Virus record (IMG/VR): IMGVR_UViG_3300042391_000634
Coordinates: 1 to 64,000 of that record
Length of the DNA stretch: 64,000 nt
Reading direction: 5' to 3' (one strand)
Under the pieces are notes generated by a model. It had not been told where the DNA came from. It saw nothing but the letters and a program-made list of their open reading frames with translations, and did not search any database. Of the stretch, positions 24,781 to 48,154 are shown one piece after another. Numbering within the stretch: the stretch's first letter is position 1; the number at the start of each line of letters is the position of its first letter. Position numbers and translations under genes: made by a program.

Positions 24781-25565
24781 AGGGGACCAAAGGTCCCCGC
24801 AAACTTCCGAGATTGTCACCATTTTACTTCCGAGATTGTCCACGTTTTACTTCCCACTATGTCTCCGACATCCGTGTCGGGAACACCCCCGATTTCCCAC
24901 TCGACCTAATTTTACTACGTTGTTTTCAGGAATAAAATCCCACCTGTAGACCCCTGAAATTTACCCCCATTTTATCCCCGTTATTGACCCTGTTAGAGGG
25001 GTTTTATTTACATGTTTTTATCGTAGGTTGTAAATCGGTATAATAATCCCACTTTTAGTGATATTTATTGATTGTGTATATACCAGCGTCATTTTGGGGA
25101 GAAAGTGGGGAAAAGTGGTAAGTTGTGGGGATTGACCCTTCCGTCAATCGAGACCCATATTCTAAAAATTTCAGATATATAACTGTATTACGGGGTCCTT
25201 CGGACCCCTTCAGGTGTGTCATAGTGTCATACAATGGTATATATGTATATATAATAGGATATGTAATACGTTCATTATTAAGGGACTAATTTCTATTTAA
25301 CATAATACCTGTTATAGGTTCACAAGTTATTAACATTGTCATACACCCTGACGACCGACCGAAGGGAGGGAGGAAACTTACTAACAACTTATCCACATTC
25401 CGTAATACGTCACTTTGCCAGACAATATCACGTTGATAGAATACCCGTTCACAAAACTTGCCAAACAATATTAGAGAACTTTTGGGCCAAACACATTTGT
25501 CCGTCATACATTCGTTCCACTACGGTAATACATAAAACCTGAAGGGGACCCATAGGGTCCCCGTA
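24781..25565. repeat. Non-coding, GC-enriched hairpin/direct-repeat zone at a convergent strand switch
   Basis: GGGGACC-AAA-GGTCCCC (24782), CTTCCGAGATTGTC x2, GGGGTCC-TTCG-GACCCC (25192), GGGGACCC-ATA-GGGTCCCC (about 25544), DnaA box 25389-25397. Confidence 0.6.
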
Positions 25566-25589
25566 ATTATGATTAATGTGTAATACGTA

Positions 25590-26513
25590 TTAATAATCTA
25601 TACCGAAGTTCCCGAAACGAGTTCTTAGAAATGAACGGAATTCTGATTGTTCTTCTTCAGACAGAGGTGAATCCGAAGGAGAGTTCTTTTTACCATCAAC
25701 TATCTCCCACCCAAAATTGGCTGCAACCGTGAACTCAGGATGTAATACTTTGTCTTGTTTGTTGTATGAATTATAATCTTGATGAACAATAAACCCTGCC
25801 TTTTTAACGTCGTAATCACTCAACTCATATGTATGACCTTTCCAAGTTCCCTTTCTAAGAGCTAGAAATACTGTATGGGCTTTCTTAAGTAACTTCTTCA
25901 TATATGGTCCATAGTCATCCGAGAAGGTTGGAAGGTCTGTTGGGGATAATTTATATGTTGATAACAATAGTGACCTTGAAAATAATATATTACCAAGTGG
26001 ACGTGGAGCCGAAACCTTTGTGTTCCATATGTGGTTCTCCATCATGTCCTTTAAGTGAAATATACCCCTCAATGGAAATACATTGATACGTTGTATCTTA
26101 ATGTCATACATGTCCAACAAACTTGTTGGAAAGATAGACGGTTTATCCCTAAGGTCAGGATTAATCTTTATCAAACTATCCACAAAGTCCTCCATACATA
26201 TTGTTAACAAATTTGTTGGGATGACTGGTGTTGAATCCATGTTTGGCATAAAGTCAATATCACATGTAATCTCCCCCAGTACACCTTCTTTGAATCTTTC
26301 TGGTGTGAATGGTATCTCTTCTATACGGATTGAATTATGAATCTCACCCTCGGGAACGATTAGGGTCTTCCAAAAGATATGGTCACTTCTATATTTCTTC
26401 AGGGTCTGAACCAATTTCTCGTTGGACCTTCTTTCAGATTTGAGCTCATCGTTATCGGATGGGATATCTGAAGGTATTGTTTCGTCCTGTTCTCTTAGTT
26501 TACTTAATTTCAT
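25590..26513 (-). CDS. Leader (MKLSKLREQ) plus C-terminal KALKKG domain protein
   Basis: TATTTATA directly upstream on the minus strand; KKAHTVFLALRKG...LRTRFGNFGI. Confidence 0.65.
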   Translation of the reverse strand: MKLSKLREQDETIPSDIPSDNDELKSERRSNEKLVQTLKKYRSDHIFWKTLIVPEGEIHNSIRIEEIPFTPERFKEGVLGEITCDIDFMPNMDSTPVIPTNLLTICMEDFVDSLIKINPDLRDKPSIFPTSLLDMYDIKIQRINVFPLRGIFHLKDMMENHIWNTKVSAPRPLGNILFSRSLLLSTYKLSPTDLPTFSDDYGPYMKKLLKKAHTVFLALRKGTWKGHTYELSDYDVKKAGFIVHQDYNSYNKQDKVLHPEFTVAANFGWEIVDGKKNSPSDSPLSEEEQSEFRSFLRTRFGNFGIDY

Positions 26514-26687
26514 GTATATAAATATTGCCAAACAATATTGACAGTGGATTCCTCCTCAAGGTTTATTTTTTTGCCAAACAATATTCGAGTCATCGTCTTC
26601 TGAGTTACTTTACTATTGACTGTCTACTGTAAACAATAAACCCCCCACAATAGTGGAGGGCTTACTATTGTCGTCCTATTGGGACAA

Positions 26688-26867
26688 TTACGCCGCTAAC
26701 AATTGGTTACGGTATGTAATTGCTGTTCTCTTGTTAGAGAAGTTCTTGCTGTGTTTAGTTCCTTCTACTGATACACGAACACGGTAGCTGTTACCATCAA
26801 AGTATACATTGTTAGAAACTGGCACATAAGTTGTCTTGGTGCGACGGGTTGTTTTTGTTGTTTTCAT
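26688..26867 (-). CDS. Small basic AP2-like DNA-binding protein
   Basis: NVYFDGNSYRVRVSVEGTKHSKNFSNKRTAITYRN resembles the AP2 beta-sheet plus helix; K/T/R-rich N-terminus. Confidence 0.5.
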   Translation of the reverse strand: MKTTKTTRRTKTTYVPVSNNVYFDGNSYRVRVSVEGTKHSKNFSNKRTAITYRNQLLAA

Positions 26868-27141
26868 CTTACTGAATTTAAATTTTAACATTATTGATTA
26901 TATTAAAATATAAAAAAATAAATCCGTAAAAAAAAATAAACGGCAACTATTTTTTCTTTTTCCCAGTAATTGTTTTGCCAAACAACATCCCGAATCCACA
27001 GTGGAACCTTAACTTCTTCTTATATAATCATACCACTCCTCACCCCATCTCTCCTCCATATAGATGAAGTGACCTTTTCTTTCCTCAGTATTAAACATTA
27101 AATACCCTTTAAAGTAATCCTTATACCACCGTAGTTTTCTT

Positions 27142-28061
27142 TTAAACCTTATCATGGTATGTTACATTTACGGTTACCTCATCTAATTTAAATGTATCAT
27201 AGAACTTCTCTAAGACATCTATCTTAGCAAGACCTGTTTCTTCAGGTTCTTGGTAGTAGTGGATGTGTTTCTTAATCTTCTTAATCTCATCCGTAATCCA
27301 TAGTTTAACAAATTGGTCATTCATTTTCTAATAGTTTATATTGTTTATCACCAATAGTATCCAAGATATATGCCACCTCTACTATATCTTCCAAGTCGTA
27401 AGTGGATAGGTCATCGAACTCATCACCATATGGTGTGGTACCTGTTAAGTATTGTCCATCAGACATTGTCTTAACTATGTATGGGACCTTGACCATTGAC
27501 GCGTCGTAGGTATTCTCCTCCGTTACATACACTGTGAACGGGTTGGTAAACTCTATGGTTTCATCAAGTTTGAATAGATTCTCTATCTCATTGCAGAACT
27601 TGGTCTTCAGGTTCTTTACTTCTTCCCTTGAGTTGTAGTTCATATTATTTAATATTAAGTTTGTGGTCAATTGAATATATTTCTTTTATCTTGGACCCAT
27701 CCATATTCACACCATCCTTATTCCAAAACGGTAGGACTCTTGGATTATACTTCACCTGTTGTCCATTGTCGGGGATGAAGTCCTCAGTTCTAATATCGAT
27801 GGTGTCACATAGAACCCACGCACATACCACCTTGTGTTCCCCATTTAATATCTTCATTGCTGTGGTCCTACTATTCTTAAGGACACAATCCTTCATTACC
27901 AACTGAACATCATATGGACTGTAGTATTTGGTATATCCATTTAGGTATTGGACCTTCCACTTCATATAGTTCTCACCTCTCCCGAGGTTGAACCTAACCT
28001 TGATTTTCTTTCCCATATTAATCTTCAGTTTCTTCGTCACAACAATAAACACATTCCCCAT
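27142..28061 (-). CDS. Three hypothetical early proteins (27142-27324, 27317-27670, 27645-about 28013)
   Basis: ORF track; overlapping stops and starts. Confidence 0.6.
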
Positions 28062-28659
28062 CTTCTTCTAAGTCACCTCCACATACTCCACATACATCAC
28101 TCTCGTCCTCATCTTCATCTAAGAGGTCTCTGTCGGAGTTACCAAGATAAGTTATCCTGATTCCTACAATCTTTTCTTTATCCATCATAACCTCCATAGG
28201 ATATTGTCCATCTCCAATACCTGATGAGGTTACCACACCCGTGTCATACGAACCAAATTGGTCCTTATGTATTGTGAACTGACACATCTTCTCATACCAC
28301 TTATCACCACCATCTCTAAAAGGTATTTCGAACGGTTGGTCAAGTGTGGGTGTTGTAATACCTTCTGCTATTTCATCGTTACGGTAACTTGTCATACAGA
28401 AGATTCCACACTGACCTGAGTCAACACCACATTCACTGTGGTCTTCCCACTCAAGTGATACACCATCGTCGGTTATGGATTCGTGAAGTATTGTAATACC
28501 TGATACACGAACACCCCAACCTGTTCCTTCGTCGGACTTTTCAACTTCGACATTGTAGAGACCGGGTAATACATTATCTAATTTGGTTTGACACCAAGTA
28601 TCCAATGAGTAACAAGGATCGGATACCATTACATTTTCGGAGAGAGTAATTTGATTCAT
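28018..28659 (-). CDS. DUF4241-like protein with acidic tail and C-terminal Zn ribbon
   Basis: VSDPCY, GVDSGQCGIF, SSGIGDGQY; CGVCGG..EEDGECVYC. Confidence 0.5.
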   Translation of the reverse strand: MNQITLSENVMVSDPCYSLDTWCQTKLDNVLPGLYNVEVEKSDEGTGWGVRVSGITILHESITDDGVSLEWEDHSECGVDSGQCGIFCMTSYRNDEIAEGITTPTLDQPFEIPFRDGGDKWYEKMCQFTIHKDQFGSYDTGVVTSSGIGDGQYPMEVMMDKEKIVGIRITYLGNSDRDLLDEDEDESDVCGVCGGDLEEDGECVYCCDEETED

Positions 28660-28709
28660 AGTTTTAAGTTTAGGATGTAAAGTTAATAAAGATTTAGAAT
28701 ATCACAAAT

Positions 28710-29210
28710 TTATTTGGAATATATTTTCTTATAGTTATCCACATTTTCTTCTATCTCATATCTCATTACTGTGGATATCTTGTCATACACTCGGTCCATG
28801 AATAACTCATTGCCAGACAATATCGTCACGTCTGCTGTTCCTTCGGGGAAGTATAAATCTATTGGGTCTATAAGAACCCTTACTTCATTAATATCATTAT
28901 CCGACCTGAAGAATGGACAACGACCATACACATAAGTGTTCCTAACAGTGTAGAGTTTAACACACTCTTTCATGTTAGTTAAAGCTCTAATCTGCATAAT
29001 GATTACTTCTAAGTTAGCCAACTGTTGAATGTCCATCTTATGTTTCGAAACCTTGGTTCTATATTCTGTTACAAAGTCTGCCAAACAATATTCGCCTGGC
29101 CCGTCTGTGTTATCACTTCTTGTTATGAACTGGTCATAGGAACTCCTTTCTTTAGAGGTCCCTACAATATTTACAAATACTCCTTCGGTGGTTTTATTTA
29201 CCCTACCCAT
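28710..29210 (-). CDS. Hypothetical protein containing two repeat half-sites and a DnaA box within its coding sequence
   Basis: TGCCAGACAA near 28811, TGCCAAACAA near 29079, TTATCCACA at 28735-28743. Confidence 0.6.
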   Translation of the reverse strand: MGRVNKTTEGVFVNIVGTSKERSSYDQFITRSDNTDGPGEYCLADFVTEYRTKVSKHKMDIQQLANLEVIIMQIRALTNMKECVKLYTVRNTYVYGRCPFFRSDNDINEVRVLIDPIDLYFPEGTADVTILSGNELFMDRVYDKISTVMRYEIEENVDNYKKIYSK

Positions 29211-29423
29211 GTTTTCTTATTTAAAATGTTAAAAAATGCTTCAGTTATTTTGCCAAACCAATTCGACCTGGAGACTCTGGCTGGTCGACCAGAAAAAACC
29301 CTGGTGTTAAAATCGTTCCCTCCATAGTATGGAGTTGGTTTTCTATATGCACTTGCCACACCATATTGGCGGCACCACTCGTCTTGAGGTGGTTGTTTTT
29401 CAGGGTAAGTAGTCTTACTCACT

Positions 29424-30035
29424 TTAGGATTCGACATTGCTTTCTTTTGTTTCGTTATATAATCTTGTTAATTCTTTCTTGTCTTCGTATGATACGAACA
29501 TATATTGGTTAAGGAAGTCTTCTAATGACATCTCTTCGCCCGAGATACTATCTAAACTATAGTCCACTTCAGACCAAAACTCATCTTTAGATAAAATATA
29601 CATTCCCTCAAGGAAACCAAACTCTTGGTCAAAGACATCCAACTCACCATCTTGCCAAGTAAATGTTGTCTCACCTGTAAATCCTACCCCACCTTCAGAG
29701 TAGTAGATGTGTCCATTCACCTGATACATTTTGCACAGATTCTCCATAAAAGGAATGGGAGGACTCCAAGCTGTTTCACAACTAAAAGATATTTCATCTT
29801 TGTTTAATGTAAATGCGTGTCTATCATATGAGATATCCCATTTAGTTCCAAACCAATTTACATTAGTATCATACCATTTCTCTTTGTAATCACCTTCAGA
29901 CATATAGGATGGAATACCTATTAGAGATTTAAACACATCATCATTCTCCTTAAGATTCTTAAGAACAGCGGTGAGGGCTTTAATAGTTCCCTCATTACCG
30001 CTGATTGTAATATTGTTATTGCACCAATTTGGCAT
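29424..30035 (-). CDS. DUF1281/Api92-like ferredoxin-fold protein
   Basis: MPNWCNNNITISG...WYDTNVNWFGTKWD...F.CETAWSPP...Y.EGGVGF.G. Confidence 0.7.
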   Translation of the reverse strand: MPNWCNNNITISGNEGTIKALTAVLKNLKENDDVFKSLIGIPSYMSEGDYKEKWYDTNVNWFGTKWDISYDRHAFTLNKDEISFSCETAWSPPIPFMENLCKMYQVNGHIYYSEGGVGFTGETTFTWQDGELDVFDQEFGFLEGMYILSKDEFWSEVDYSLDSISGEEMSLEDFLNQYMFVSYEDKKELTRLYNETKESNVES

Positions 30036-30291
30036 ATTATAAGAATTTAGTTTTATCGTAGAAGTTATTGTCGAGAGCTTTCTTAATCCCACTAATTAAA
30101 TGACATCTTGGTTCGGTGTCATACACTTCAGGATATTTAACCTTAATTTTCTCTCTTGCGGTATCAAACATAGTTTCGATTACTTCGGGAGTAACTCCTT
30201 TACCTTTTTCAATAAACTTCACAATTTTATTTAATTGTGTTTGACAAGCTGTATCACCAGCTTTACTATACATTTCAAAACTCATAGTATT

Positions 30292-30888
30292 TTAGTTTTC
30301 TTGTTCTTGTTTAAAATCATTTAGGAACTCACTCTCTAATGGTAAGTTATTCAAATCATATTTCTTTATCAACTTGATTGGATAATACTCACTTTCTTTA
30401 TCGGTTAGATTAAAGAACCTGTCCTCTATGGTTAATGGATTTTTATTAAAACCCTCGTAAACCTCTAATACATTCTTATCCAAATCTACAAGATATGCCC
30501 ACTCACAGAATAAACTATCACCTGCGAAGTCGGTGCTATCAGTAATCCATATCTCATCTTCTTCACCATTCATAATCATTTCAAGAATTTTAGCTCCATT
30601 GTCTCTTGTTAGATAAGGATACTTTTCCTGATACAATTTTGACTGGTCTCCATCCATCCAACCATTCTCACATCCAATAGACTTTAGCCACTTGCTAATT
30701 TCTTTTTCTTTACTACCATTCATAAACTTGACCTTACTTAATTTCTTCTTGAAGTCGTCCAAGTTGTTTGTTGATAAAAAGTCTAATACGACAACACCAT
30801 TACCTGATGGGTATCCATCCCATTGTCCGTATTGAGCTACCTTTGTTTCTCCATTGGAGATTACCATTGTTAAGTTTCTTGTTCCCAT
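30292..30888 (-). CDS. Conserved phage hypothetical protein (GTR...QWDGYPSG.G family)
   Basis: MGTRNLTMV...YGQWDGYPSGNG...EWAYLVDLDKNVLEVY. Confidence 0.6.
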   Translation of the reverse strand: MGTRNLTMVISNGETKVAQYGQWDGYPSGNGVVVLDFLSTNNLDDFKKKLSKVKFMNGSKEKEISKWLKSIGCENGWMDGDQSKLYQEKYPYLTRDNGAKILEMIMNGEEDEIWITDSTDFAGDSLFCEWAYLVDLDKNVLEVYEGFNKNPLTIEDRFFNLTDKESEYYPIKLIKKYDLNNLPLESEFLNDFKQEQEN

Positions 30889-31187
30889 TTTTATAAGTTT
30901 AGGATACAAAGATAATCATTATATCATTACACACAAACTTTTTTTGTTAAAATTTTGCTAAAGGATTTTAAATTTCTCACAGACATGCATCTGGTTGATA
31001 TTGTTTGGCAACGTTTGCGCTGGTAAATGCTGCAAATGCGCTCAGGGGGTATTTGTTTGGCAAAATCTTGGTATTGATAATCAATGAGTTATGTTTTGCC
31101 AAACAATATCTGTCTGGTGTGCCTGGTGATTTTTCTGGTAAAACTGGTGAATTGGCTGGTGCGAAGCAACATTGGCACATGCGAAGC

Positions 31188-31216
31188 AAAAAAAATCCCC
31201 CGTATTTCTACGAGGG
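31188..31216 (-). terminator. Repeated intrinsic terminator (CCCTCGTA-GAAA-TACGGGG followed by a U tract)
   Basis: Near-identical copies at about 31191, 33884 and 37250; variants at about 26638, 35039, 36172, 38219, 38808 and 39586. Confidence 0.75.
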
Positions 31217-31640
31217 ACTGAACTAAACTTACGAACCCACCTATCTAAAACTTACTTACTTTGTAATACGTCTTTTAATAATCTGAAAGAACCTTTGATT
31301 ATAGTTGTCTCTTTAATTGCATCATCTATTGATTTAAAACTCTTGTGTAATACGAAAGTCTTACCATCATTAGAATACCAAACATCGTATGTGTTTTTAC
31401 TTTGGGATAAAATAATCTTCGTTGTCATAATAATACGGATTGATTAAGATGTAAAGGTAATACATTTTATATTACAAACAAAAAAATTTAATTATAAACA
31501 TTATTTTTCCACATTTATTTTTGCCAGACAACATCCCTCAGGGGCCTTACATCTTGTCATACAGCAAATAAAAATGGGTATCATTTCTGACACCCATTCT
31601 ATAACAAACACTACTATATTGAACACTTCTATATAATATA

Positions 31641-33577
31641 CTAAATATTTTCCACTTTATCAACTTTGTTGGAATAAACCTCCAATACATCACCCAACTG
31701 ATTCATATTGTATATTTCAGCCGTCGACTCTCCACCATTTTCACTTGGGTCTAATGTTTCTTTGACACCATCTATTTCTTCCCAACTGATTTCATCGAGG
31801 TCTCCCGATTCATACATTTCTTTGGCAATCTTCACGGCTTGGTTTAAGTCCTCAGCTTTAACTTCAAAGTCGGTTCTCATCCACGTGGTAATCTTTTGGT
31901 CTATAAAGAATTCAAATGTTTTCATTGTTACTTATTTAATTCGTTAATTAATGTGATATCAGCTTCGGACATTTCATCTACCATTACTTTACTTAACTCG
32001 TCGAGATGTTTGCCAGAGAATTTGTCATACCCACCCATTTGGTATTTGGGATAAACAATTTTTGTTTCGGTGTCGATTACAGATGCAACTGATTTTAATT
32101 CTACTATCATGTTAATTAATTTAATTTTCTTATTGACATATAATTTTCTAATTCATCCAAAGAAATACGACCATCGTTAGAACTATAATAACCTTGTAGT
32201 TCGTATCGTTTTTTCCATTTATCAAATGCCTCAAATGCTTTTTTCTTTGAGGGGTAATATGGTTTATCGAACTCAATCGTAAACCCGTCGGGGGATAATA
32301 CTTGATACTTTATCATAGTCCTGCGTTTTTAATTATACAATCTAATTTATATTCAAACTCTTGGGTCATACCCTCAATGTCATACACCCTTTTAGTTTCA
32401 TCGTCGTCGGGATGATAAAATGAGATGTCCACTTTAATTACATTTTCATTGGTTTTTTTAACCATTGTTTGTGAATATTCGGTTTCGTGTTTAGTGTCCA
32501 TATGTTGAGAACCACTAAATCTATTTTGTGAATGAACAACTACAACTTGGTGAGGACCTACCGGTTCCCAACCATCGTTAATTTTATTACCAACTACTAC
32601 TGAAAGTCCTTCGGGACTACTTGATGCTACGATTTTATATTCCATTTGATTTAATTCATCATTAAGTTAAAAAATTTGATACCTAACTCTTGTAATTCTT
32701 TACACTTTCTTTTTTTTACTACTTCATCACGAACGTACATTGACTTATCGGATGTAATACCTAAGTCCATCATAGAAAAGAAGTGTTCCCACTTACCACC
32801 AACGAATAACTCACCTGTAAATCTTTCAAGTGCATTGTAACATTCGTAGGTCATTTTTAATTTAACCCCATTAACTTTCGGTTCTTGTATTACTAACACA
32901 TCGTGGGATGTATCCCTTGTGTGTGATTTACTTTCGTAGATTACTTTATTTTTCATTTGTGATAGTTTTAAATTGATTTAGATTACAAAGATAATTTAAT
33001 ATTGTGTTAGGGAAATGTTAAAGTGTTAACGATATAAGGTAACATAATCACCAAAATACTTTTCAAAAACATTTAATAAGTTTTCGTAATCACCTTTCAT
33101 CATTTCAGATTGAATTACTTTACCATCCAAACCTAATTGTTTTGCAAACTTGGATGCCATACCAATTAATACAAATGCGTTTCCATCGGGACCAGTTAGG
33201 TCGATTTCAATTCCTGATTTTTTTTCGTTGATTGACTTTATCATAACTTAATTTTTATTTTTGTTTATAATTTTTTTCTCAAACCATTGTTTCATTGTTA
33301 ATGGTGTTAGGGCATCGGATAAATCAGTTAGAATATATTCTCCTGATTTAATTTTAGTTTCAGTTTCTTTTTTCGATTCCCCCAAAAATTGATTCCTATA
33401 CTTTCCCGTTGTCTTGGAATAATTCCAATAGGTCTCATCCAAATAAACTCTCCCGTCTTCAATCTTTACAATAATACTTTCGTAGGACTGAAAGATTCTT
33501 AAACTTTCGTTTCTAATTACAATCTGATTGGGAACTTTGTTCCCGTTCGAACTTGTTAAATTTCTAATTGTTGTCAT
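31641..33577 (-). CDS. Seven small early hypothetical ORFs (31641-31925, 31928-32110, 32116-32316, 32313-32645, 32651-32956, 33026-33244, 33248-33577)
   Basis: ORF track; TATCTTTG -7 elements upstream (CAAAGATA at about 32986 and about 33596 on the + strand). Confidence 0.6.
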
Positions 33578-33931
33578 ATTATTTGATTTAGGATACAAAG
33601 ATAATTCATTTTAAATTATACTACAAACTATTTTATGTTAAAACTTTGTTAAGATGTAATACGAATGTTTCACCTGTCGTCCGAGCTATGATATTGTTTG
33701 GCATTGTAATACGTTTGCCAAACAACTTTGGATGTCATCGGAACATGTGGGACTTCGGGAACATCAGGAACATCTTTTTGGGAACATTGGGAACATTGGG
33801 AACATGCGCACTGTGAATATCTTCTGGCAAATGCCAAACAATATTCATAGCTCACCAGGTGCTAGTATTTCCTATCGGACAATAAAAAACCCCCGTATTT
33901 CTACGAGGGTTCGGGGGACAAACAATAACCA

Positions 33932-34777
33932 TTAAACCATATGAACCAAATCTGAAAATATCTCTTGTTCTACTTGACCGATACCACCGAACATTTTTGC
34001 CTCGGTATTATCGTTCTTACTATAAGAGTGTGTTGTGTATTTTGTTACACCACTAAACAAACCCCAAAGGTTATCACCTTTACCTTGAATCTCACCATTT
34101 AAGTCAATATAGAATCTACTTAAATTGTTTTTAGTTCTTGTAGATAATTCATCACTATCTAAACTAAATTCAGGTTTGATGCCAAACAACTTTCGTGTCA
34201 CCTTCTCCTTCAACAAATCGTCAAAACGTGTTTCACTCAATTCAGTAATGAATCTGAATGTTTCTTTTTCTTCTTCCAATACAACGTCTAATCTTCTACA
34301 AATGTCTTCCACTTTTAAAGACATAGACTTTGTGTGTCGAACTTTGTTTTGAAGTCCACTCATCACTCTAAAGAATGTGTTCATACAACTGATAGTCGTA
34401 TTAGAATGACCGAATGCTAATGATGTAGAACCATCAAAAGAATTCACACCTGTTAAATAACCCTCAATTCGGTCGTTACCCAATTTAAGGTCGTTACCTT
34501 TTAATTGAACGTAAATACGTCCACCACCTTTGAACTCACCACCACGATGAATTTCTAAACCTGTTCTACCTGATACTTGATGTAATAAGTCCATCAACTC
34601 ATGGTTCTGATAAGGAACATAACCATCAGAGTGTAAACCCACAATATCTTGTGTGTCGTTTCTAACGATTGCTTTTTTGTTTGGAATACTAATACCACTA
34701 ATGGTTTGTAATTCCTCCTGACGTACCGTCCAATTAAGGTTGGTCTTGTCTAATAATGTTTTTACTTGTTCGTTCAT
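33932..34777 (-). CDS. DUF932-family phage/plasmid protein
   Basis: W.V..E.L, AIVR.DT..IVG.HS..Y...QN, NSFDGSTS..F..S.....CMN, LWGLFSGVTKY.TH. Confidence 0.8.
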   Translation of the reverse strand: MNEQVKTLLDKTNLNWTVRQEELQTISGISIPNKKAIVRNDTQDIVGLHSDGYVPYQNHELMDLLHQVSGRTGLEIHRGGEFKGGGRIYVQLKGNDLKLGNDRIEGYLTGVNSFDGSTSLAFGHSNTTISCMNTFFRVMSGLQNKVRHTKSMSLKVEDICRRLDVVLEEEKETFRFITELSETRFDDLLKEKVTRKLFGIKPEFSLDSDELSTRTKNNLSRFYIDLNGEIQGKGDNLWGLFSGVTKYTTHSYSKNDNTEAKMFGGIGQVEQEIFSDLVHMV

Positions 34778-35089
34778 ATAAATTAATTTAGAGTGTAAAG
34801 GTAGGTCTTTTATATTACCCACCAAATAATATTTGTTAACACTTTGTTAAAGAATATGTAATACGAATGGGATCCACTGTGCCATCTGAATATTGATTGG
34901 CAATTGCCAAACAAATTGTCTACGGTGCCCTGAACCAAGTCGTGTTGTCCTGTTTTTTATATAATAAAGTGGACAAGTGTAATACGTTTGCCAAACAATA
35001 TATTTGCATGCATGATGCAGGAAAGTTTGGACATAAAAAAAGGGATTGTCATACGACAACCCCCTCTTACTTTATCACTACTAACCCTC

Positions 35090-35836
35090 TTAAATGTTTC
35101 TCAAATTAATTCTACTTTCTTTGTTTCTACTAAAATTATAGATTTCTTCTATCATTTTAATATATTCATCTACACTACCACAAAAGTGAATATTAGTTGG
35201 TCTTAACTTTACCTTACGAACAAACTCACTAAAAGAAAAGTCTTTACATCTTGTTAAAGTTTTGATAATCGCTCTTACGAATGTTGAACGATTATAACCC
35301 TCAAACAAAGGTTTCAATTCCATAATGTTCATCGCCCATTCAATCGCCTTATCCATATTCTTTGTAACAAACTTACCACTCTCAAAGTTCTCTCTATCAC
35401 AACCACTTAACGAATTCGTACATAACATCATACATTCAGTTGGTCTTAATTCGGGATATTGTTTCATAAAGTTATTTAACTTAATGTAGTGTGGATTTCC
35501 CTCTACAACAAACCCGTGAATATGGTCGGTTATCGCCCAATTCTTTTGACGACTATTTAAACTTCTAATTGTTTCAAAACCTGCGGTCGTTTCTAAAATA
35601 TAAGAAATAGGAACCCCTACTTCCATAGCGGCGGTTACTCTATGTTGTCCATCAATGATTTCACCTTTCTTGTTGATAACAACATAAGAACCTCTTTCCC
35701 AACCACGAACTTTCATATTGTTTACAATATTCTTTACGTGGGATTTGTTAATAACTCTATTGTCACTTCTAAATGTGAAAATAGAATAATCTTTTGTTTG
35801 GTAAACTTCGTTTACTTTTTTTCCGTTACGTATCAT
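35090..35836 (-). CDS. ParB/Srx N-terminal-like protein
   Basis: NR.IN..HVK.I...M, VVINKKGEIIDGQHRVTAA. Confidence 0.7.
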   Translation of the reverse strand: MIRNGKKVNEVYQTKDYSIFTFRSDNRVINKSHVKNIVNNMKVRGWERGSYVVINKKGEIIDGQHRVTAAMEVGVPISYILETTAGFETIRSLNSRQKNWAITDHIHGFVVEGNPHYIKLNNFMKQYPELRPTECMMLCTNSLSGCDRENFESGKFVTKNMDKAIEWAMNIMELKPLFEGYNRSTFVRAIIKTLTRCKDFSFSEFVRKVKLRPTNIHFCGSVDEYIKMIEEIYNFSRNKESRINLRNI

Positions 35837-36225
35837 TTTTATTTTTGTTCAGATTTTATCCTGTCCCCGAGATTGATTAATAATGATAGAACAAAGATAT
35901 GTTGTATATTATTATATTCCAAGTATTATTTAGAATATTTTAGTTAAGAATATGTTAAAGTGTAATACGAAGATTTCCCCGCTGTTGCTGCAGTACGATA
36001 TTGATTGGCAAATTTTTGACCAGTGTTGATGCAGCTCAGGACCAGTGACGATATTGATTGGCAAATGCCAAACAAGTTTCAGCGCATGCGTTGTGGGACT
36101 CGACTAAGTGTAATACGTTTGCCAAACAATATTCCCTGAACTTCACAGTGCCGCTGAATTTGATAAACAAAAAAAAGGATAGTCTTTCGACTACCCTTCT
36201 TCACCTTTTCCAACCTTATGTATTT

Positions 36226-36771
36226 CTACACAAGTTCTTTTTCCAAGTGTTGTAATACGGACTTACCTTCACTTTCACATTCTTCTTCACCAAAATATCC
36301 ACCACAACTTTCAACTAATGTTTTATGTTCGTGTCCTTTATCACAAGTTTCTATTTCATATACTTCATAACAATAAACTTCACCCGTTAGATACTTATCG
36401 TAAGTTTCAATTTCACCTTTAAGGTATTCTTCAACTTTAGTTTCATCAATACCTTCTTTCTTTATCTTATGTTTAGATACAAAGATAAAACCAACCTGTC
36501 CACTATCCCAACGACAATCAAACGGACTTGTTGATATAGTTATACCCGAGTGGTCATATAGATACAAAGGTAAGATAACAACTTCACCTTCATTAGTAAT
36601 AATACCTTCTTTTAATTCGTCCCAACTATCATAATCTTCAGTTCGATAATCAGTCTTGTCACCAAGTTCATACCTTTTGTGAAAACATACCATCGTTCCC
36701 AAGTTATCCCAATCGGTTCGAGGGTTCATTGGGTTTGTGTCTTGTTCAATTTTTAATTCAAATTTTTTCAT
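36226..36771 (-). CDS. Conserved phage hypothetical protein
   Basis: NPRTDWDNLGTM.CFH.RY.LGD...LPLYLYDHSG.TI...WDSGQVGF...SCGGYFG. Confidence 0.65.
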   Translation of the reverse strand: MKKFELKIEQDTNPMNPRTDWDNLGTMVCFHKRYELGDKTDYRTEDYDSWDELKEGIITNEGEVVILPLYLYDHSGITISTSPFDCRWDSGQVGFIFVSKHKIKKEGIDETKVEEYLKGEIETYDKYLTGEVYCYEVYEIETCDKGHEHKTLVESCGGYFGEEECESEGKSVLQHLEKELV

Positions 36772-37305
36772 ATTGTTTGTTTTAGAGTATAAAGGTAAGT
36801 CTTTTATATAACATACCAAAATATTATCGTTAAGACTTTGTTAAAGAATATATCACCTGTTGGGACCGGCATCGATTGAATATTGGTTGGCAATTGCCAA
36901 ACAAATAGCAGCGCGCGCTGCTTTTCACGGGGTATTGTAATACGTTTGCCAAACAATAACCGCACAGGCCTGTGGCGCATGGTCTACAGCATTTCTTGTT
37001 CATTAATTCTTCTTGTTCACGTTCCGTGAACATAGGTAATACGTGAACACTTTTGCCAGACAATATTTCCTGAATTCGAACCGTCGGGGTGTATTCCCTC
37101 CACTATGTATTACGAAAGTCAATGGTAGTAAGGGTTTAATAATTCTTTAGAGAACTTTTAGTAAGTTTTTAGCAAATATTGTAGCAAATAGTGTGAAACT
37201 TGCCAAACAACTTGTCTACAGCGCGCACCCGGTAGATTCTCTACCAAATAAAAACCCCCCGTATTTCTACGAGGGGAACACAATATAAATCACAAACAGA
37301 ACAAA

Positions 37306-37898
37306 CTAATCTACCATATCATATTTCCAATCCATTTTTTCCATAACCTTCTCAATCTTGTCATACACTTTGGAATCTTCTACTCGGTTGAACATTTCAT
37401 CAAACACAAGTATAGAACTCGGGTCACAAAAATAGGTGTTTGTTTCTTTAACAACAACAACGTTGTATTCATCAACATTATACCAATTACCAACTCTTTG
37501 TAATTTCATATCAATTAATTTTTAGGGTTTAAGTAGATTTCCATTCTCGCGGGAACGACTTTTGCCAGATTACATTCATCACAACATTCGTCATCTTCAT
37601 TTTTAGTTTCTAACGGGTGTGGGTCATTACCATAACCTTCTACTTCTTTGTCACAAAGACAACAGATAAACTTTTCCATTTTTATTTAATTTAATACTTG
37701 AAAAATATCCTTACCAATAATCAATCCTAATGTTCTTCCGTTATCCCATTTAACATTGACAACATCAAAACCAACATTATACACAACTCCTTCACGACCA
37801 ACTAAAATTGGTTGTGGGTCATCTTCCATTGGTTCAATAAGTTTAACTCTTTTACCCATAAGTAATTGTGGGTTTACAAGGAAATCATTTACTATCAT
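37306..37898 (-). CDS. Small ORFs 37306-37509, 37515-37679 (Cys-rich CCLC...CCDEC; absent from the track) and 37686-37898 (DUF4314-like)
   Basis: Manual translation MEKFICCLCDKEVEGYGNDPHP...CCDECN; G.RV.LI..M.DD..PI..G.EG.V...VKWDNGRTLGLI.G.D. Confidence 0.55.
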
Positions 37899-38265
37899 AG
37901 TGTTTGTTTTAGAGTGTAAAGATAAGTGTAATACTTTTATATTACAAACTCATTTAGTTAAAACTATGTTAATGTGTAATACGACCAAACCCGTGGAGGA
38001 AGACCGGATAATTTATTGTTTGGCAAAATGTAAAGTAAAACCCCCACAATATGTAATACGAATTCACCCGTGGGACGAGTTTACTCAGGAGATATTGATT
38101 GGCAACCTTGTTACCTTTTTATATAAAACCATAACATAAGTCAAGTTTTTGAATCAATAAACTTGACATCTGCCAAACAATATCCGGATGGAGACGACAG
38201 GTGAGAGGTGTGGAAATAAAAAACCCCCTACTTTCGTAGAGGGTCTTGGTCTTTGGGAGGAATAA

Positions 38266-38532
38266 TTAATTCAATGGAATTTCTTTACCAATACCATACT
38301 CACAAATTTTGTGTAGTAAGGGTAAAACTCTACTACCGATAATCTCATTCAAATACTCATCTCTGTCAAATTCATCATCGGTGTCATCTTCAATGTTTTT
38401 ACCCGTTTGGTCAAAATACATATCACCAATCATTTCAAGAAATTCGTTATCACTCATTTCTTCAATCAATTGTGTTAATCGGTCAGTAATAACTCCATTA
38501 ACAATTTCTAATACTTTTTCTTTTTTGTTCAT
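38266..38532 (-). CDS. Hypothetical protein
   Basis: Start reassigned to MNKKEK, downstream of the conserved TACCTTTACACTCTAAA module. Confidence 0.6.
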   Translation of the reverse strand: MNKKEKVLEIVNGVITDRLTQLIEEMSDNEFLEMIGDMYFDQTGKNIEDDTDDEFDRDEYLNEIIGSRVLPLLHKICEYGIGKEIPLN

Positions 38533-39630
38533 TTTATTTGTTTTAGAGTGTAAAGGTAATACAATTATAGGACATACCAAAATTCATCAGTTAAAACTTT
38601 GTTAATGTAATACGTTTTCACCCGGGTGTAACTGATTGTTGTGTGGCAATTGCCAAACAAGTTCACCGATGGGATCCACGGTGTGTGTCGTAATACGAAT
38701 CTTTGCCAAACAATAGTTCGGATACTTCACGGGGAAGTGTTCCTTCATTAGAATAATTGCCACACAACATCTTAGCGGAACCCTGACTCAAGTCCGTTGT
38801 GGACATAAAAAACCCCCACCATAGAAATGATGAGGGTAAATCTAAAATGAAAACACAGACAATTACATATAAGACCATTTACGACCAAGAATATTGTTTA
38901 CCATTACACGAAACGATTTTTTATACAAACGATACATTCTATCCTCTCCCGTTGAAGTTCCAATTTTATCACTGAACTTAAAAGTCCATATAAAACGAAC
39001 AATAAAGAAAGGAGTTAAAATAAACACGATAATGATAGTTTGCCAAAGAAATTTCAATAGATACTTCATAATTTTAAAATTTTAAATGAGTTTTTAAATT
39101 ACCCTACAAGGACAATGTAGGACATAAAATAGGTTAATGAGAAACTGAACATTAGTAGTCCGTAGATTTTGATTTTCTTTTCCATTTGATTAAGTAGTTT
39201 AGGACACAAAGATAATACTTTTATCTTTATATTTTCTTATCTATTAAGAATTGGTCGTTAAAATTATGTTAATGTAATACCAAGTGGTGAGGAGTTACGA
39301 AGACACAGGAGAATATTGTGTGGCAAATCGGATATGGTTACGAATATTAACGGATATATACGGATATTGCCAATCAATATCACATTCTACAAGGAATCCA
39401 ACATTCGTTGTATGACAATTGCCAAACCATATTATTTTCTACAACCGAGATCCCTTCCATTTTTATTGTTAAACCTATGTTAAAGGTTTGCCAAACAACA
39501 ATTCGGATTTGGATTCTGTGTTCGGTGTTATGTATGACAATTGCCAAACAATAGTTCGGATTACTTCGTAAGGTTCGGGTCAAAAAAAAACCACTCCTTT
39601 CGGAGTGGTCGGTTTGTAGGGGAACAAACC

Positions 39631-40185
39631 TTAAAGAATTGTGTATTCTTGTTTAAGAATTTTAATTCTTTTAATGTGGTCTAAACTCATTACCTTATAG
39701 TTTAAGGTATTGTCTAAACCATTTTGATACTTTGAGTAGTCCGTTTTCGTATCAATAAGGTATTGAGTGAACATTACCTTTTCAATACTATTACCCTCAA
39801 ACACATACTTTGTATCAAGGTAAGAACTATCGTGGTCTTGGTAACGAAAGTAAAATTTCGTTGGGTCGGACTTTAATACTACCAAACTTTTTGATACTAA
39901 CTGATAAGGACTTTCTTTCTTATCCTCGTTTACGATAGGGGTAATTCCTTCGGTCTTATACTTTCTACCTAATTGACCTTCGTAATCAAAACCCGTTTGG
40001 ATATTTGATAACTTTTGTTCAATCAAAACTAAATCGTAATAAGGGTTAGGGTTACTTTTACCACTTACTTTGAAGTCAAGATATTTGTTCATCTTAACTT
40101 TTTTTAATGTTGTCAATCCCACATTAGGGACAAAGATATCTATACCTGATAGTATATCTTTTAGTTCTGTTTTTGTAATGTTCAT
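39631..40185 (-). CDS. Hypothetical protein, first gene of the inverted island
   Basis: Start MNITKTE; TATCTTTG -7 element upstream. Confidence 0.6.
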   Translation of the reverse strand: MNITKTELKDILSGIDIFVPNVGLTTLKKVKMNKYLDFKVSGKSNPNPYYDLVLIEQKLSNIQTGFDYEGQLGRKYKTEGITPIVNEDKKESPYQLVSKSLVVLKSDPTKFYFRYQDHDSSYLDTKYVFEGNSIEKVMFTQYLIDTKTDYSKYQNGLDNTLNYKVMSLDHIKRIKILKQEYTIL

Positions 40186-40235
40186 ATATCTTATTGTTTT
40201 GTTCCCACAAAGATATAGTATATTCCAATACAAAG

Positions 40236-40278
40236 TTAGAATATTCTAATAAAGTTATCCACATTCCGTTGTGGATAA
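40236..40278. promoter_or_regulatory. Palindrome TTAGAATATTCTAA plus an inverted pair of perfect DnaA boxes
   Basis: Palindrome 40236-40249; TTATCCACA 40255-40263 and TGTGGATAA 40270-40278, 6 bp apart. Confidence 0.65.
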
Positions 40279-40319
40279 AGTGTTGATATCGTGGGGGTTC
40301 ACCTTCGGGAACAAAGTTG

Positions 40320-40610
40320 TTTGGCAGTGGGGTGTATAGGGGTGTAGGTAGTGGTAGGGGGGGTCCCCCCTCCCGTATCCCCCCTTTATATAGTCATTTT
40401 GGGGGGGTCTAAACAGGGGGTCAATGCCACGACTGAAATTTTTCCAGAAATTTTTGGGAACATTTAAGGTTTTTTACTGCTCACATTTAAGACTGAAAAT
40501 TAGAACTATATTTCTAATCCATATAATAACTCTTATTATTCGGGGGGTAAAACCTGTAATTGGAAATATATGTCTAAAAACTGAAAAAAAAATTCCAGAA
40601 AATTTTTGGG
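40320..40610. other. G-run-rich non-coding zone at the divergent strand switch (possible terminus, pac or origin)
   Basis: GGGGTGTA x2, GGGGGGGTCCCCCC (40357-40370), GGGGGGGTCT, GGGGGTC; direct repeat ACTGAAA...TTCCAGAAA(A)TTTTTGGGA near 40432 and 40580. Confidence 0.45.
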
Positions 40611-40622
40611 ATATTTATACAT

Positions 40623-41168: not shown

Positions 41169-41169
41169 T

Positions 41170-48152: not shown

Positions 48153-48154
48153 TA

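What the first reader, a model, noticed from the sequence alone, without database searches (positions are those of the whole stretch)
24781..40610. A 15-kb inverted early island bounded by GGGG(A/T)C hairpin zones: possible terminal-repeat or first-step-transfer region
Seen: essentially all genes from 25.6 to 40.2 kb are on the minus strand in a mostly plus-strand window. The left boundary (24781-25565) has three GGGGACC/GGTCCCC-type hairpins (one with a C-UUCG-G loop), direct repeats and a DnaA box. The right boundary (40236-40610) has G-runs, GGGGGGGTCCCCCC, a direct repeat and two DnaA boxes. Known: SPO1 and T5 place small host-takeover genes under strong host promoters in a long terminal repeat, and T5 has a repeat- and hairpin-rich injection-stop signal. 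Inference: 40.3-40.4 kb may be a physical genome end or origin, and 24.8-25.6 kb an injection-stop-like or repeat boundary.
Basis: partly seen in the sequence, partly recalled or inferred. Interest (0 to 1): 0.62.

Follow-up and report, generated by a model that had tools for sequence, protein, structure and literature searches.

The report
Self-regulated early/anti-defence island, T4-like jumbo phage
The inverted 15-kb block is a hypervariable cluster of small, probably early and anti-defence genes in a T4-like freshwater jumbo phage; it has its own repeated promoter-operator-terminator cassettes and two conserved non-coding boundary elements, and nothing indicates a genome end or terminal repeat.

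Summary
Genes at 25.6-40.2 kb are all on the minus strand. The three GGGGNCC hairpins are the only ones in the 335.6-kb genome, and the two boundaries are its two densest G/C-run clusters.

The end, terminal-repeat and injection-stop reading is not supported:
- The record closes on itself through a 126-bp overlap.
- Relatives read straight across its ends.
- Terminase, portal and capsid are T4-type, which predicts headful packaging.
- Both boundary elements are single-copy.
- The roughly 2x contig-depth step at 40.1-40.7 kb coincides with strain branch points.

What is there is about 28 small genes in at least 9 short operons. Each has a Bacteroidota-type promoter (TTTG-N19-TAnnTTTG), an intrinsic terminator and upstream arrays of a 14-bp motif, ATATTGTTTGGCAA. 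27 of its 28 genomic copies lie in the island, and it changes sequence between related lineages.

Gene content matches establishment/anti-restriction sets: DUF932, DUF1281_C, DUF4314 and a ParB/KorB-like protein.

The left boundary holds a roughly 300-bp non-coding core conserved across nine lineages. Its function is unknown; an origin, a protein-binding array or an insulator remain possible.

Closest known: T4 hyperplastic regions with PeSL cassettes.

The parts
24782..24798 (.). GC hairpin GGGGACC-AAA-GGTCCCC, 8 nt after the stop of the plus-strand gene 23673-24773. On the minus strand it is followed by TTCAGGGTTTATTT. It marks the convergent junction and is probably a bidirectional transcript stop.
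   Evidence: It is not at this exact place in relatives, which carry another GC hairpin about 100 bp further in.
24803..24863 (+). 23-bp direct repeats (ACTTCCGAGATTGTC core, 2.5 copies), iteron-like.
   Evidence: Partly conserved in L055.
24935..25240 (.). Conserved non-coding core. It consists of five phased C-tracts (about 12.5-bp period, 24948-25000), an AT-rich spacer of about 95 bp with invariant TTTTTATCGT, TATATA..GTCATTTTGGGG, four phased G-tracts (about 10.5-bp period, 25096-25131) and GGGGATTGACCC. Single copy. Function unknown; candidates are a protein-binding array, an origin or an insulator.
   Evidence: More than 90% identical in L055 and L056, where the flanking genes are about 70%. 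Found in nine lineages. The G-tract block is inverted in L079 and L058. RNA folds are no better than shuffles. No Rfam match.
25192..25214 (+). Hairpin GGGGTCC-UUCG-GACCCC plus TTCAGG, directly after the invariant TATAACTGTAnTAC.
   Evidence: Identical in L055, L056, L065 and L071.
25215..25537 (-). Island-type regulatory stretch without a gene. It holds operator sites at 25415 and 25458, CGTATTAC boxes at 25263 and 25402, GTATGAC boxes, and TTATCCACA at 25389.
   Evidence: Indels relative to L055 and L056 rule out a conserved ORF.
25538..25562 (-). Hairpin GGGGACCC-UAU-GGGUCCCC plus TTCAGGTTTTATG, 28 nt after the stop of the last island gene. Probably its terminator.
   Evidence: Conserved, with loop changes, in L055, L056 and L071.
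25590..40185 (-). The island: about 28 small genes in at least 9 transcription units.
27645..28061 (-). Phage L5 gp82-like protein.
   Evidence: PF25735, E 5e-7.
29424..30035 (-). DUF1281_C / Api92-like ferredoxin-like domain protein.
   Evidence: E 6e-13. The family recurs in relatives' islands.
33932..34777 (-). DUF932 / TIGR03299 phage/plasmid-like protein.
   Evidence: Found in every relative's island examined.
35090..35836 (-). ParB/Noc/KorB-like two-domain protein (DGQHR motif in the N-domain, helical C-half). Candidate binder of the operator motif.
   Evidence: phrog_12305, E 1e-35. Homologs carry PF02195. The AF2 model has pLDDT 88. Foldseek matches ParB, Noc and KorB at probability 1.0.
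37686..37898 (-). DUF4314 protein.
   Evidence: E 3e-12. Recurs in relatives.
39631..40185 (-). First and best-conserved island gene (184 aa), specific to this clade. The fold is a small beta-barrel with only weak Sm/WYL/YaeO-like matches.
   Evidence: RNA-library contigs cover 39820-40186.
34893..34914 (.). Palindromic full operator TTGATTGGCAA|TTGCCAAACAA. Sister sites lie at 36883-36904 and 38639-38660. About 25 further half-sites ATATTGTTTGGCAA lie between 25415 and 40327.
36771..37276 (-). Example of one full regulatory cassette. In order: terminator (37276-37255), operator and CGTATTAC boxes, palindrome, TTAACAAAGTCTTAAC, TTTG (-33), TACCTTTA (-7), and ATG at 36771.
31194..31219 (-). One of four near-identical terminators, CCCTCGTAGAAATACGGGGG plus a T-run. 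The others are at 33887-33912, 37255-37276 and 38220-38247. Further minus-strand terminators lie at 31571-31600, 36171-36202, 38812-38837 and 39589-39610.
40186..40622 (.). Right boundary, a divergent control region. It holds tandem -7 boxes for the 184-aa gene (40209-40216 and 40229-40236), the palindrome TTATCCACA-N6-TGTGGATAA (40255-40278), one operator half-site (40317), the G/C-run core (40328-40421) including TATATA-GTCATTTTGGGG (40386-40404), and then ATATTTATA immediately before the ATG at 40623.
   Evidence: The core is conserved in seven relatives.

Best explanation
The block is a hyperplastic early-gene island of a roughly 335-kb T4-superfamily jumbo phage from lake water. Its host is probably a Flavobacteriia/Bacteroidota bacterium.

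The island is transcribed leftwards, opposite to its neighbours, as at least 9 short operons. Each operon starts from a host-type promoter (TTTG, about 19 nt, TAnnTTTG, about 20 nt before the ATG) and ends at a strong intrinsic terminator.

Upstream of the promoters lie arrays of a 14-bp site, ATATTGTTTGGCAA, some paired into 22-bp palindromes, together with CGTATTAC and TTAAC-N6-TTAAC boxes. These sites are confined to the island and make it one regulon.

I infer that a phage protein binds them to switch the whole island off, or on, together. The likeliest candidate is the island's own ParB/KorB-like protein. This would resemble KorB on plasmid RK2 or stoperator-binding repressors in cluster A mycobacteriophages.

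The genes are of the establishment/anti-restriction kind, and cassettes are exchanged between relatives at the repeated regulatory modules.

The right boundary is the divergent control region between this regulon and a rightward set of genes that use a different start-proximal motif, ATATTTATA. The left boundary is the convergent end, where GC hairpins stop transcripts from both sides. It also contains a deeply conserved, iteron-like DNA element of unknown role.

Shown: strand layout, motifs and their confinement to the island, terminators, conservation, protein families, T4-type core genes, and circular assembly.

Inferred: early timing, host RNA polymerase use, anti-defence function, the ParB-operator pairing, and terminator activity of the boundary hairpins.
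For: T4-type core: TerL, portal E 8e-80, gp23 E 2e-63. The nearest isolates include Flavobacterium phage immuto, and one homolog of the first gene is binned to Flavobacteriales.

Promoters: at least 11 island genes carry TTTG-N19-TAnnTTTR about 20 nt before the ATG. There are 9 full matches in 16 kb against 1.3 in shuffles, and the extended box TAnnTTTRnAnnCTAAA has 8 of its 14 genomic copies in the island, all on the minus strand.

Terminators: 19 against 10 expected, with 8 strong ones on the minus strand.

Operator confinement: ATATTGTTTGGCAA (up to 1 mismatch) 27 of 28 copies in the island; TTGGCANNTGCCAA 6 of 6; CGTATTAC 18 of 25. The sites stop exactly at 25415 and 40317.

Lineage-specific variants of the same motif in relatives' islands:
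- ATAATGTTTGGCT, 30 copies
- ATATTGTTCCGCT, about 46 copies, mostly intergenic
- ATTATGACCGGC, about 25 copies
- ATATTGTTTTGC, about 10 copies

ParB/KorB-like protein.

Gene families shared by the islands: DUF932, DUF1281_C, DUF4314, GP88 and L5 gp82. Relatives also carry an orphan DNA methylase, a weak SAM-lyase hit and a faint AcrVA2 hit.

Mosaicism and contig breaks at the repeated modules.

Hairpin clusters at the same convergent boundary in other lineages, four within about 360 bp in L061 and L062, with the stem covarying A-T to T-A.

RNA-library contigs lie on island genes but not on the 40187-40640 spacer.
Against: - There are no expression-timing data. The RNA contigs come from relatives (90-97% identity), and DNA carry-over cannot be excluded.
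- No island protein has a proven anti-defence function, and most have no family at all.
- The link between the ParB-like protein and the motif is circumstantial. Any island gene would co-diverge with the motif. Two unrelated small phages with 34-35% identical ParB-like genes have no repeated motif. The ParB CTP-binding box GERRxRA reads DGQHR here.
- The boundary hairpins lack the U-tract that the island's internal terminators have.
- Concerted evolution of repeated cassettes could give lineage-specific motifs without any binding protein.
Confidence: 0.6

Rival explanations
1. One reading: the island is a collapsed long terminal repeat or a first-step-transfer region, with a physical genome end at 40.3-40.4 kb and an injection-stop or repeat boundary at 24.8-25.6 kb.
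For: Contig depth in the probable source run is 22.6x over 37.6-40.1 kb and 9.7-11.7x right of 40.66 kb. A second lake sample shows 8.7-9.3x against 3.2-4.3x. Small early-type genes with strong promoters sit in terminal repeats in SPO1 and T5 (established knowledge). Homologs of the DUF932 gene lie near the right end of many actinophage genomes.
Against: - The depth falls in three steps (22.6, 19, 11.3, 9.7) at unitig breaks. Each break has alternative branches, including joints 40386>40584 and several different sequences entering at 40621. That is the signature of co-existing strains in a hypervariable flank.
- The record closes into a circle, and relatives cross its ends.
- Both boundary elements are single-copy.
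- Terminase, portal and capsid are T4-type, which means headful packaging and permuted ends.
Confidence: 0.07
2. One or both boundary elements are replication origins. In the left core, inverted arrays of phased C/G-tract iterons flank an AT-rich spacer. Alternatively, a promoter (TATATA..GTCATTTTGGGG) reads into a G-rich non-template strand and forms a priming R-loop, as at T4 oriF/oriG or ColE1. DnaA boxes lie nearby. This is compatible with the main explanation.
For: - The core is conserved at nucleotide level in lineages whose island proteins are only about 50% identical.
- It is single-copy.
- The tracts are phased at about one helical turn.
- Inversion of the G-tract block in two lineages points to a double-stranded DNA site.
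- GTCATTTTGGGG after TATATA is shared by both boundaries.
- TTATCCACA is enriched, 8 against 1.4 expected.
- 23-bp direct repeats lie at 24803-24863.
Against: - Skew only follows transcription and shows no origin-type inflection.
- No initiator gene was identified next to the element.
- The DnaA-like boxes sit at a fixed distance upstream of four promoters, in the direction of transcription.
- Origins in T4-type phages are not known to use iterons (established knowledge).
Confidence: 0.2
3. The left core encodes one or two small RNAs. One would be a C-rich RNA ending at the weak terminator at 24986-25010. The other would be a G-rich RNA of about 125 nt starting after TATATA near 25088 and ending at the UUCG hairpin at 25192-25208.
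For: The sequence is strongly conserved without an ORF. Terminator-like hairpins lie at both candidate 3' ends. The stem of the hairpin family covaries.
Against: - Folding energy is no better than shuffled sequence (z -1.3 and 0.0).
- The internal hairpin predicted in the window is not kept in relatives.
- The G-tract block is inverted in two lineages without a matching change in the C-tract.
- There is no Rfam match.
- No RNA data were available for this stretch.
Confidence: 0.15
4. The island is a horizontally acquired plasmid- or ICE-derived module, inserted between 15-bp direct repeats (TTATCCACATTCCGT at 25389 and 40255).
For: GC content is 33-37% against about 30% in the flanks. The gene families are typical of conjugative-element establishment regions. 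The 15-mer occurs only at the two boundaries.
Against: - No integrase or transposase was found among the proteins searched.
- The island, with the same families and boundary elements, is present in many divergent relatives, so any acquisition is ancient.
- In relatives the left copy of the box sits at a different place and lacks the full 15-mer.
- The higher GC comes largely from the GC-rich regulatory spacers.
Confidence: 0.08

Closest known systems
Hyperplastic regions of T4-like phages with PeSL (promoter-early stem-loop) cassettes (Arbiol et al. 2010, PMC2839356; Comeau et al. 2014, PMC4122927)
   Same: It is a T4-type core genome. It has a block of small, mostly unknown, variable genes. 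Repeated composite terminator-plus-early-promoter motifs sit between the cassettes. Indels and replacements between relatives are bounded by those motifs.
   Different: The promoters are of Bacteroidota type (-33 TTTG, -7 TAnnTTTG), not sigma-70 type. The spacers are much longer, 300-480 bp. They carry an additional island-exclusive operator array that changes between lineages. The island is delimited by two conserved non-coding elements. The genome is twice the usual size.
KorB-OB global regulon of IncP plasmid RK2 (ParB-family repressor with 12 palindromic operators)
   Same: A ParB-fold protein is encoded within the regulated region. Palindromic sites lie at varying distances upstream of many promoters. 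The model matches KorB structures 8qa8 and 8qa9.
   Different: Binding is not shown. The CTP-binding box is not conserved (DGQHR). Most sites are half-sites. The element is a lytic-type phage, not a plasmid. No KorA-like partner was identified.
Stoperators of cluster A mycobacteriophages (L5, Bxb1)
   Same: There are dozens of copies of a 13-14-bp asymmetric site in short intergenic spaces, and the consensus shifts between related lineages.
   Different: The sites are confined to one 16-kb island rather than spread over the genome. Their orientation is not uniform (19 minus, 9 plus here; both orientations in L083). No immunity repressor or integrase was seen, and the genome is T4-like and presumably virulent.
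SPO1 host-takeover module and T5 pre-early (first-step-transfer) region
   Same: It is a dense cluster of small genes with strong host-type promoters and terminators, plausibly acting first in infection.
   Different: Those modules lie in long terminal repeats of genomes with fixed ends. Here there is no evidence for a repeat or an end, and the packaging genes are T4-type.
Anti-defence islands in plasmid leading regions (Samuel et al. 2024, PMC11541004)
   Same: Establishment-type genes are clustered, uniformly oriented, and mostly small and uncharacterised. Methylases and anti-restriction candidates occur in relatives' islands.
   Different: The DNA is double-stranded phage DNA, and no single-strand (Frpo-type) promoters are needed or seen. 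The family overlap is my observation; it was not tested against that paper's lists.

Membership tests
T5-type first-step-transfer region / injection-stop signal | Lies within a long direct terminal repeat of a genome with fixed ends | tested here: not met
   There is no second copy of the island or its boundaries. The assembly closes into a circle, and relatives cross the record ends. The depth step is confounded by strain branches.
T5-type first-step-transfer region / injection-stop signal | T5-like packaging and injection machinery (fixed-end terminase, A1/A2 pre-early proteins) | tested here: not met
   TerL, portal and capsid are T4-type. A1 and A2 homologs were not searched for specifically. 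None of the island proteins hit a named T5 family.
T5-type first-step-transfer region / injection-stop signal | Two-step DNA entry pausing at the signal | not testable with these tools
   Needs an infection experiment.
SPO1-type host-takeover module | Many small genes, each group with a strong host-type early promoter and a terminator | tested here: met
SPO1-type host-takeover module | Located in the terminal redundancy | tested here: not met
   Raw-read coverage was not available.
T4-like hyperplastic region with PeSL cassettes | Genome of the T4 superfamily | tested here: met
   gp17-, gp20- and gp23-type genes.
T4-like hyperplastic region with PeSL cassettes | Repeated composite terminator/early-promoter motifs between small variable ORFs | tested here: met
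   Four near-identical terminators and at least 8 promoters with a shared extended box.
T4-like hyperplastic region with PeSL cassettes | Indels and replacements between close relatives have their end points in the motifs | tested here: inconclusive
   Alignment blocks with L002-L010 start and stop at the regulatory spacers, and several relatives' contigs break there. Breakpoints were not mapped to the base.
ParB/KorB-type operator regulon | ParB/Srx N-domain plus helical DNA-binding domain | tested here: met
   PF02195 in homologs. Model pLDDT 88. ParB, Noc and KorB matches at probability 1.0.
ParB/KorB-type operator regulon | CTP-binding box GERRxRA | tested here: not met
   The aligned position reads DGQHRvxAA, invariant in 28 homologs.
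ParB/KorB-type operator regulon | The protein binds the repeated palindromic sites | not testable with these tools
   There is only co-location and co-divergence. The complex predictor takes no DNA.
Cluster A mycobacteriophage stoperators | Many copies of an asymmetric 13-14-bp site with lineage-specific consensus | tested here: met
Cluster A mycobacteriophage stoperators | Sites in one orientation relative to transcription, spread over the whole genome of a temperate phage | tested here: not met
   There are 19 minus and 9 plus copies, and 27 of 28 lie within 16 kb. Both orientations occur in L083.
DnaA-dependent origin | Cluster of DnaA boxes next to an AT-rich unwinding element | tested here: inconclusive
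   There are two boxes at 40255 and 40270 and one at 25389, and the nonamer is enriched in the window. However, the boxes are part of a promoter-upstream motif shared by four genes, and skew is uninformative.

The most novel reading that the evidence does not exclude
This clade of freshwater T4-like jumbo phages keeps its early/anti-defence genes in a self-contained regulon. A phage ParB/KorB-like protein recognises dozens of rapidly co-evolving operator sites and silences or times the whole island. The island is anchored by an ancient iteron-like DNA element that may be an origin or a loading site. That would be a plasmid-style global control circuit inside a lytic phage.
Probability: 0.22. 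Interest if true: 0.7.

Novelty: new variant of a known kind. Interest (0 to 1): 0.5.

Why it matters
The island corrects a tempting misreading: strand inversion plus GC hairpins does not mean a genome end. It also gives a clean, sequence-defined example of how a large uncultured phage organises its accessory early genes.

Three features give concrete handles for experiments and annotation:
- The island-exclusive operator motif marks such islands in related metagenomic genomes.
- The lineage-to-lineage drift of that motif suggests a specificity-evolving regulator-site pair, like immunity systems but in a T4-like phage.
- The boundary core is conserved more deeply than the proteins around it.

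The roughly 28 unknown genes are a candidate pool for new anti-defence functions against Bacteroidota defence systems.

Tried and rejected
- **Nucleotide and protein searches of isolated phages.** The island and a conserved flank gene gave no match, so there is no cultured close relative.
- **Whole-genome handle for the 334-kb relative.** It is not held. Circular continuity was shown instead with loci L011 and L012.
- **tRNA and Rfam scans.** The window and both boundaries gave nothing. There was one sub-threshold snoRNA hit, which I take as chance.
- **Sigma-70 promoter scan.** It found no more sites than shuffles (72 against 72.6). That fits a host with non-sigma-70-type promoters.
- **RNA folds of the two halves of the left core.** They were no better than shuffles, so I did not build a covariance model.
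- **Reading ATATTGTTTGGCAAACGTATTACA as a sigma-54-type -24/-12 promoter.** Rejected because the spacing between TGGCAA and CGTATTAC varies (0, 4 or 9 nt) and GC at -12 is replaced by AC.
- **Reading GGGGGGGTCCCCCC as a functional hairpin.** Rejected because it is not conserved.
- **GTCATTTTGGGG site at 22944.** It lies inside a coding sequence and I take it as chance.
- **Read evidence.** Only Logan contigs were available, with no raw reads, and only one stretch could be laid (5,901 bases, within the operators' limit). 
- **Structure searches for the 184-aa first gene.** Foldseek found nothing. VIA-align gave only Z 5-6.4 small-beta-barrel matches (YaeO, Hfq, WYL), below the level that means kinship.
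- **NCBIfam and PDB sequence searches.** They added nothing beyond TIGR03299 for the DUF932 protein.
- **Complex prediction.** Not used, because the claim at stake is protein-DNA binding, which it does not test.

Full report
**Setting**

The window is the first 64 kb of a 335,630-bp IMG/VR virus record with about 30% GC. The record has no terminal repeat as filed. However, positions 11-136 are identical to positions 335505-335630, and the first ten bases look like an assembler artefact. Two relatives (L011, L012) read straight from sequence matching our 3' end into sequence matching our 5' start. So the record is a closed circle in assembly, and its ends are arbitrary.

The genome carries T4-type genes:
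- terminase, with best isolate matches to Microcystis phage Mel-JY01, Flavobacterium phage immuto, and huge uncultured phages
- portal (E 8e-80)
- major capsid (E 2e-63)

. No cultured close relative exists in the phage collection. IMG/VR holds dozens of related contigs, several of 290-334 kb. Public runs that hold the sequence are lake-water and freshwater metagenomes.

**Checking the observation**

- The GGGGNCC-loop-GGNCCCC hairpin occurs three times in the whole genome, all within 24782-25562.
- The two boundaries are the two densest G/C-run clusters of the genome.
- TTATCCACA occurs 8 times in the window against 1.4 expected.
- The boundaries share a unique 15-mer and the 12-mer GTCATTTTGGGG preceded by TATATA.

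GC skew changes sign at both edges. It does the same at every other minus-strand block of the genome, so it only reports transcription direction.

**What the island is**

On the minus strand the island holds about 28 small genes. At least eleven of them are preceded, about 20 nt before the ATG, by TAnnTTT(G/A), with TTTG about 19 nt further upstream. That is the promoter form known for Bacteroidota housekeeping sigma factors (established knowledge, not tested here).
- Full matches are about seven times more frequent than in shuffled island sequence.
- An extended version of the -7 box has 8 of its 14 genomic copies here, all on the minus strand.
- A sigma-70 scan finds no excess.
- Eight strong intrinsic terminators lie on the minus strand. 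Four are near-identical, with the CCCTCGTAGAAATACGGGGG stem followed by a T-run.

The spacers between a terminator and the next promoter are long, 300-480 bp, GC-rich and built from the same parts in the same order:
1. ATATTGTTTGGCAA sites, three times paired into the 22-bp palindrome TTGnTTGGCAA|TTGCCAAACAA
2. CGTATTAC boxes
3. TTAAC-N6-TTAAC
4. the promoter

Genome-wide, 27 of the 28 copies of the 14-mer (up to one mismatch) lie in the island. So do all six palindrome hits and 18 of 25 CGTATTAC boxes, although the island is 4.8% of the genome. The outermost copies are at 25415 and 40317, exactly at the two boundaries. The island is therefore one regulon with its own cis-element.

**Gene content**

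Families recognised:
- DUF932/TIGR03299
- DUF1281_C (Api92-like)
- DUF4314
- phage L5 gp82-like
- a weak DpnD/PcfM hit
- a ParB-like protein

.

Homologs of the ParB-like protein carry PF02195. Its AlphaFold model (pLDDT 88) matches ParB, Noc and KorB over both domains with Foldseek probability 1.0. The CTP box reads DGQHR rather than GERR.

Islands of five further lineages were reached through this protein. They repeat the same families and add GP88, DUF6915, bPH_2, an orphan cytosine methylase, a weak SAM-lyase hit and a faint AcrVA2-like hit. This is the flavour of the establishment/anti-restriction gene sets of plasmids and phages. No function is proven.

The first gene (184 aa) is the best conserved and is specific to the clade. 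Its fold gives only weak small-barrel matches.

**Comparison with relatives**

The island is mosaic. Alignable blocks with eight relatives begin and end at the regulatory spacers, cassettes are replaced or missing, and several relatives' contigs break inside the island at the repeated modules.

The key result is that the high-copy motif changes with lineage while keeping its frame:

| Lineage | Motif | Copies |
|---|---|---|
| This genome and close relatives | ATATTGTTTGGCAA | 28 in the genome, 27 in the island |
| L088 | ATAATGTTTGGCT | 30 |
| L083 | ATATTGTTCCGCT | about 46, nearly all intergenic, often inverted pairs about 50 bp apart |
| L085 | ATTATGACCGGC | about 25 |
| L089 | ATATTGTTTTGC | about 10 |

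. This behaviour is typical of a binding site that co-evolves with its protein. Mixed orientation argues for a DNA site rather than an RNA signal.

The island-encoded ParB/KorB-like protein is the only recognisable DNA-binding candidate, but the link is circumstantial. Two unrelated small phages with distant homologs have no such motif.

**Right boundary (40186-40622)**

This is the divergent control region. On the minus strand two tandem -7 boxes precede the 184-aa gene. The TTATCCACA-N6-TGTGGATAA palindrome overlaps the upstream part of the distal one.

The same TGTGGATAACTnTA element sits upstream of three other promoters, in the direction of transcription, at 16682, 23013 and 28735. So I read the 'DnaA boxes' as a promoter-class element. 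Whether host DnaA or a phage factor binds it is open.

The G/C-run core is conserved in seven relatives, but the G7/C6 palindrome is not. To the right, plus-strand genes carry a different signal, ATATTTATA, 2-9 nt before the start codon. There are 36 such sites in the genome, eight of them in 40-50 kb and one in the island, before its last gene. Cassettes there are also shuffled between relatives.

**Left boundary (24782-25562)**

This is the convergent end.
- The hairpin at 25544 follows the last island gene by 28 nt.
- The hairpin at 24782 follows the plus-strand gene 23673-24773 by 8 nt.
- The third, at 25192, follows a conserved core on the plus strand.

The hairpin family, with TAC/TGC before and TTCAGG after, recurs in about 19 related low-GC contigs. 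Its stem covaries (GGGGACC/GGTCCCC against GGGGTCC/GGACCCC) and its loops vary. In another lineage four copies in mixed orientation fill the same junction. I infer a bidirectional transcript barrier. Unlike the internal terminators these hairpins lack a U-tract, so terminator activity is an inference.

Between them lies a roughly 300-bp core (24935-25240) with three features:
- It is more than 90% identical in relatives whose flanking genes are about 70% identical.
- It is detectable in nine lineages.
- It is single-copy.

It consists of five C-tracts phased at about 12.5 bp, an AT-rich spacer of about 95 bp, TATATA..GTCATTTTGGGG, and four G-tracts phased at about 10.5 bp. In two lineages the G-tract block is inverted. 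RNA folding is no better than shuffles, and Rfam finds nothing. A double-stranded DNA function fits best: an origin, a loading or centromere-like site, or an insulator. An sRNA is not excluded.

**The end / terminal-repeat hypothesis**

Against it:
- circular closure of the assembly
- relatives crossing both the record ends and the right boundary
- single-copy boundaries
- T4-type packaging genes

.

For it there is only contig depth: 22.6x, then 19x, 11.3x and 9.7-11.7x across 40.1-40.7 kb in the probable source run, and a similar fall in a second lake sample. Each step is a unitig break with alternative branches present in the same runs. The joints 40386>40584 and 40386>40577 are examples, and several different sequences join at 40621. 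The fall in the second sample is gradual.

That is what co-existing strains with different cassettes to the right of a shared island edge would give. Logan contigs cannot show read starts, and only one stretch could be laid. The decisive raw-read test remains to be done. I put this reading at about 7%.

**Verdict**

The closest known kind is a T4-type hyperplastic region with PeSL promoter-terminator cassettes (PMC2839356, PMC4122927). This one is a new variant for three reasons:
- It has Bacteroidota-type promoters.
- It has an island-exclusive operator array that drifts between lineages and may be read by a ParB/KorB-like protein.
- It has two conserved non-coding boundary elements.

No alternative genetic code was used.

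Noticed in passing
window 1-136 and genome 335505-335630: The record is filed as linear but closes on itself. Positions 11-136 repeat the last 126 bases, and the first 10 bases look like an assembler artefact, being the reverse complement of bases 59-68. Both record ends lie inside a gene.
   Followed up: yes
window 40610-55910, plus strand: ATATTTATA lies 2-9 nt before the start codon of many plus-strand genes. There are 36 such sites in the genome, 30 on the plus strand and 8 within 40-50 kb. This may be a second promoter or start-site class, reminiscent of but not identical to the T4 late box TATAAATA.
   Followed up: partly
window 16682, 23013, 28735, 40255: A DnaA-box-containing element, TGTGGATAACTnTA, often next to TAGAATAT, lies upstream of four promoters in the direction of transcription. 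This looks like a small promoter class of its own.
   Followed up: partly
window 44124-44938: Four tandem 219-bp repeats (64-71% identical) lie inside the 456-aa gene 44010-45380. That gene has treble-clef zinc-finger hits (DUF723, DUF4379) and a faint TreK hit. The 366-aa gene just left of the island (23673-24773) also has a weak zinc-finger-type hit.
   Followed up: no
genome 216-245 kb and 184-200 kb (outside the window): The 11-mer CCTGAAGAACC occurs up to 60 times per 16 kb in a 36-40% GC stretch at 224-240 kb. CCAACTAGTAC occurs about 20 times at 184-200 kb. These are probably highly repetitive coding sequence.
   Followed up: no
genome 302958-303137 and window 13016-13273: Besides the main gp23-type capsid gene at 125.2-126.7 kb, there are short extra matches to the Gp23 family. 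One is over the cut-off at 303 kb. The other, in the window, is weak.
   Followed up: no
window 38264-38534, 39820-40186, 41168-41488: Contigs from two lake metatranscriptome libraries, 90-97% identical and therefore from relatives, lie on island genes and on genes to the right. None lies on the 40187-40640 spacer.
   Followed up: partly
window 6147-7499, minus strand: A 450-aa protein with FG-GAP repeats and a faint dockerin-like hit, in a small minus-strand patch of the otherwise plus-strand left flank.
   Followed up: no
L049 16497-16739 and L036 1293-1369: In two more distant relatives a match to the right-boundary core lies only about 6 kb from the homolog of the gene at window 266-1099. 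The island's position relative to that gene therefore differs between lineages.
   Followed up: no
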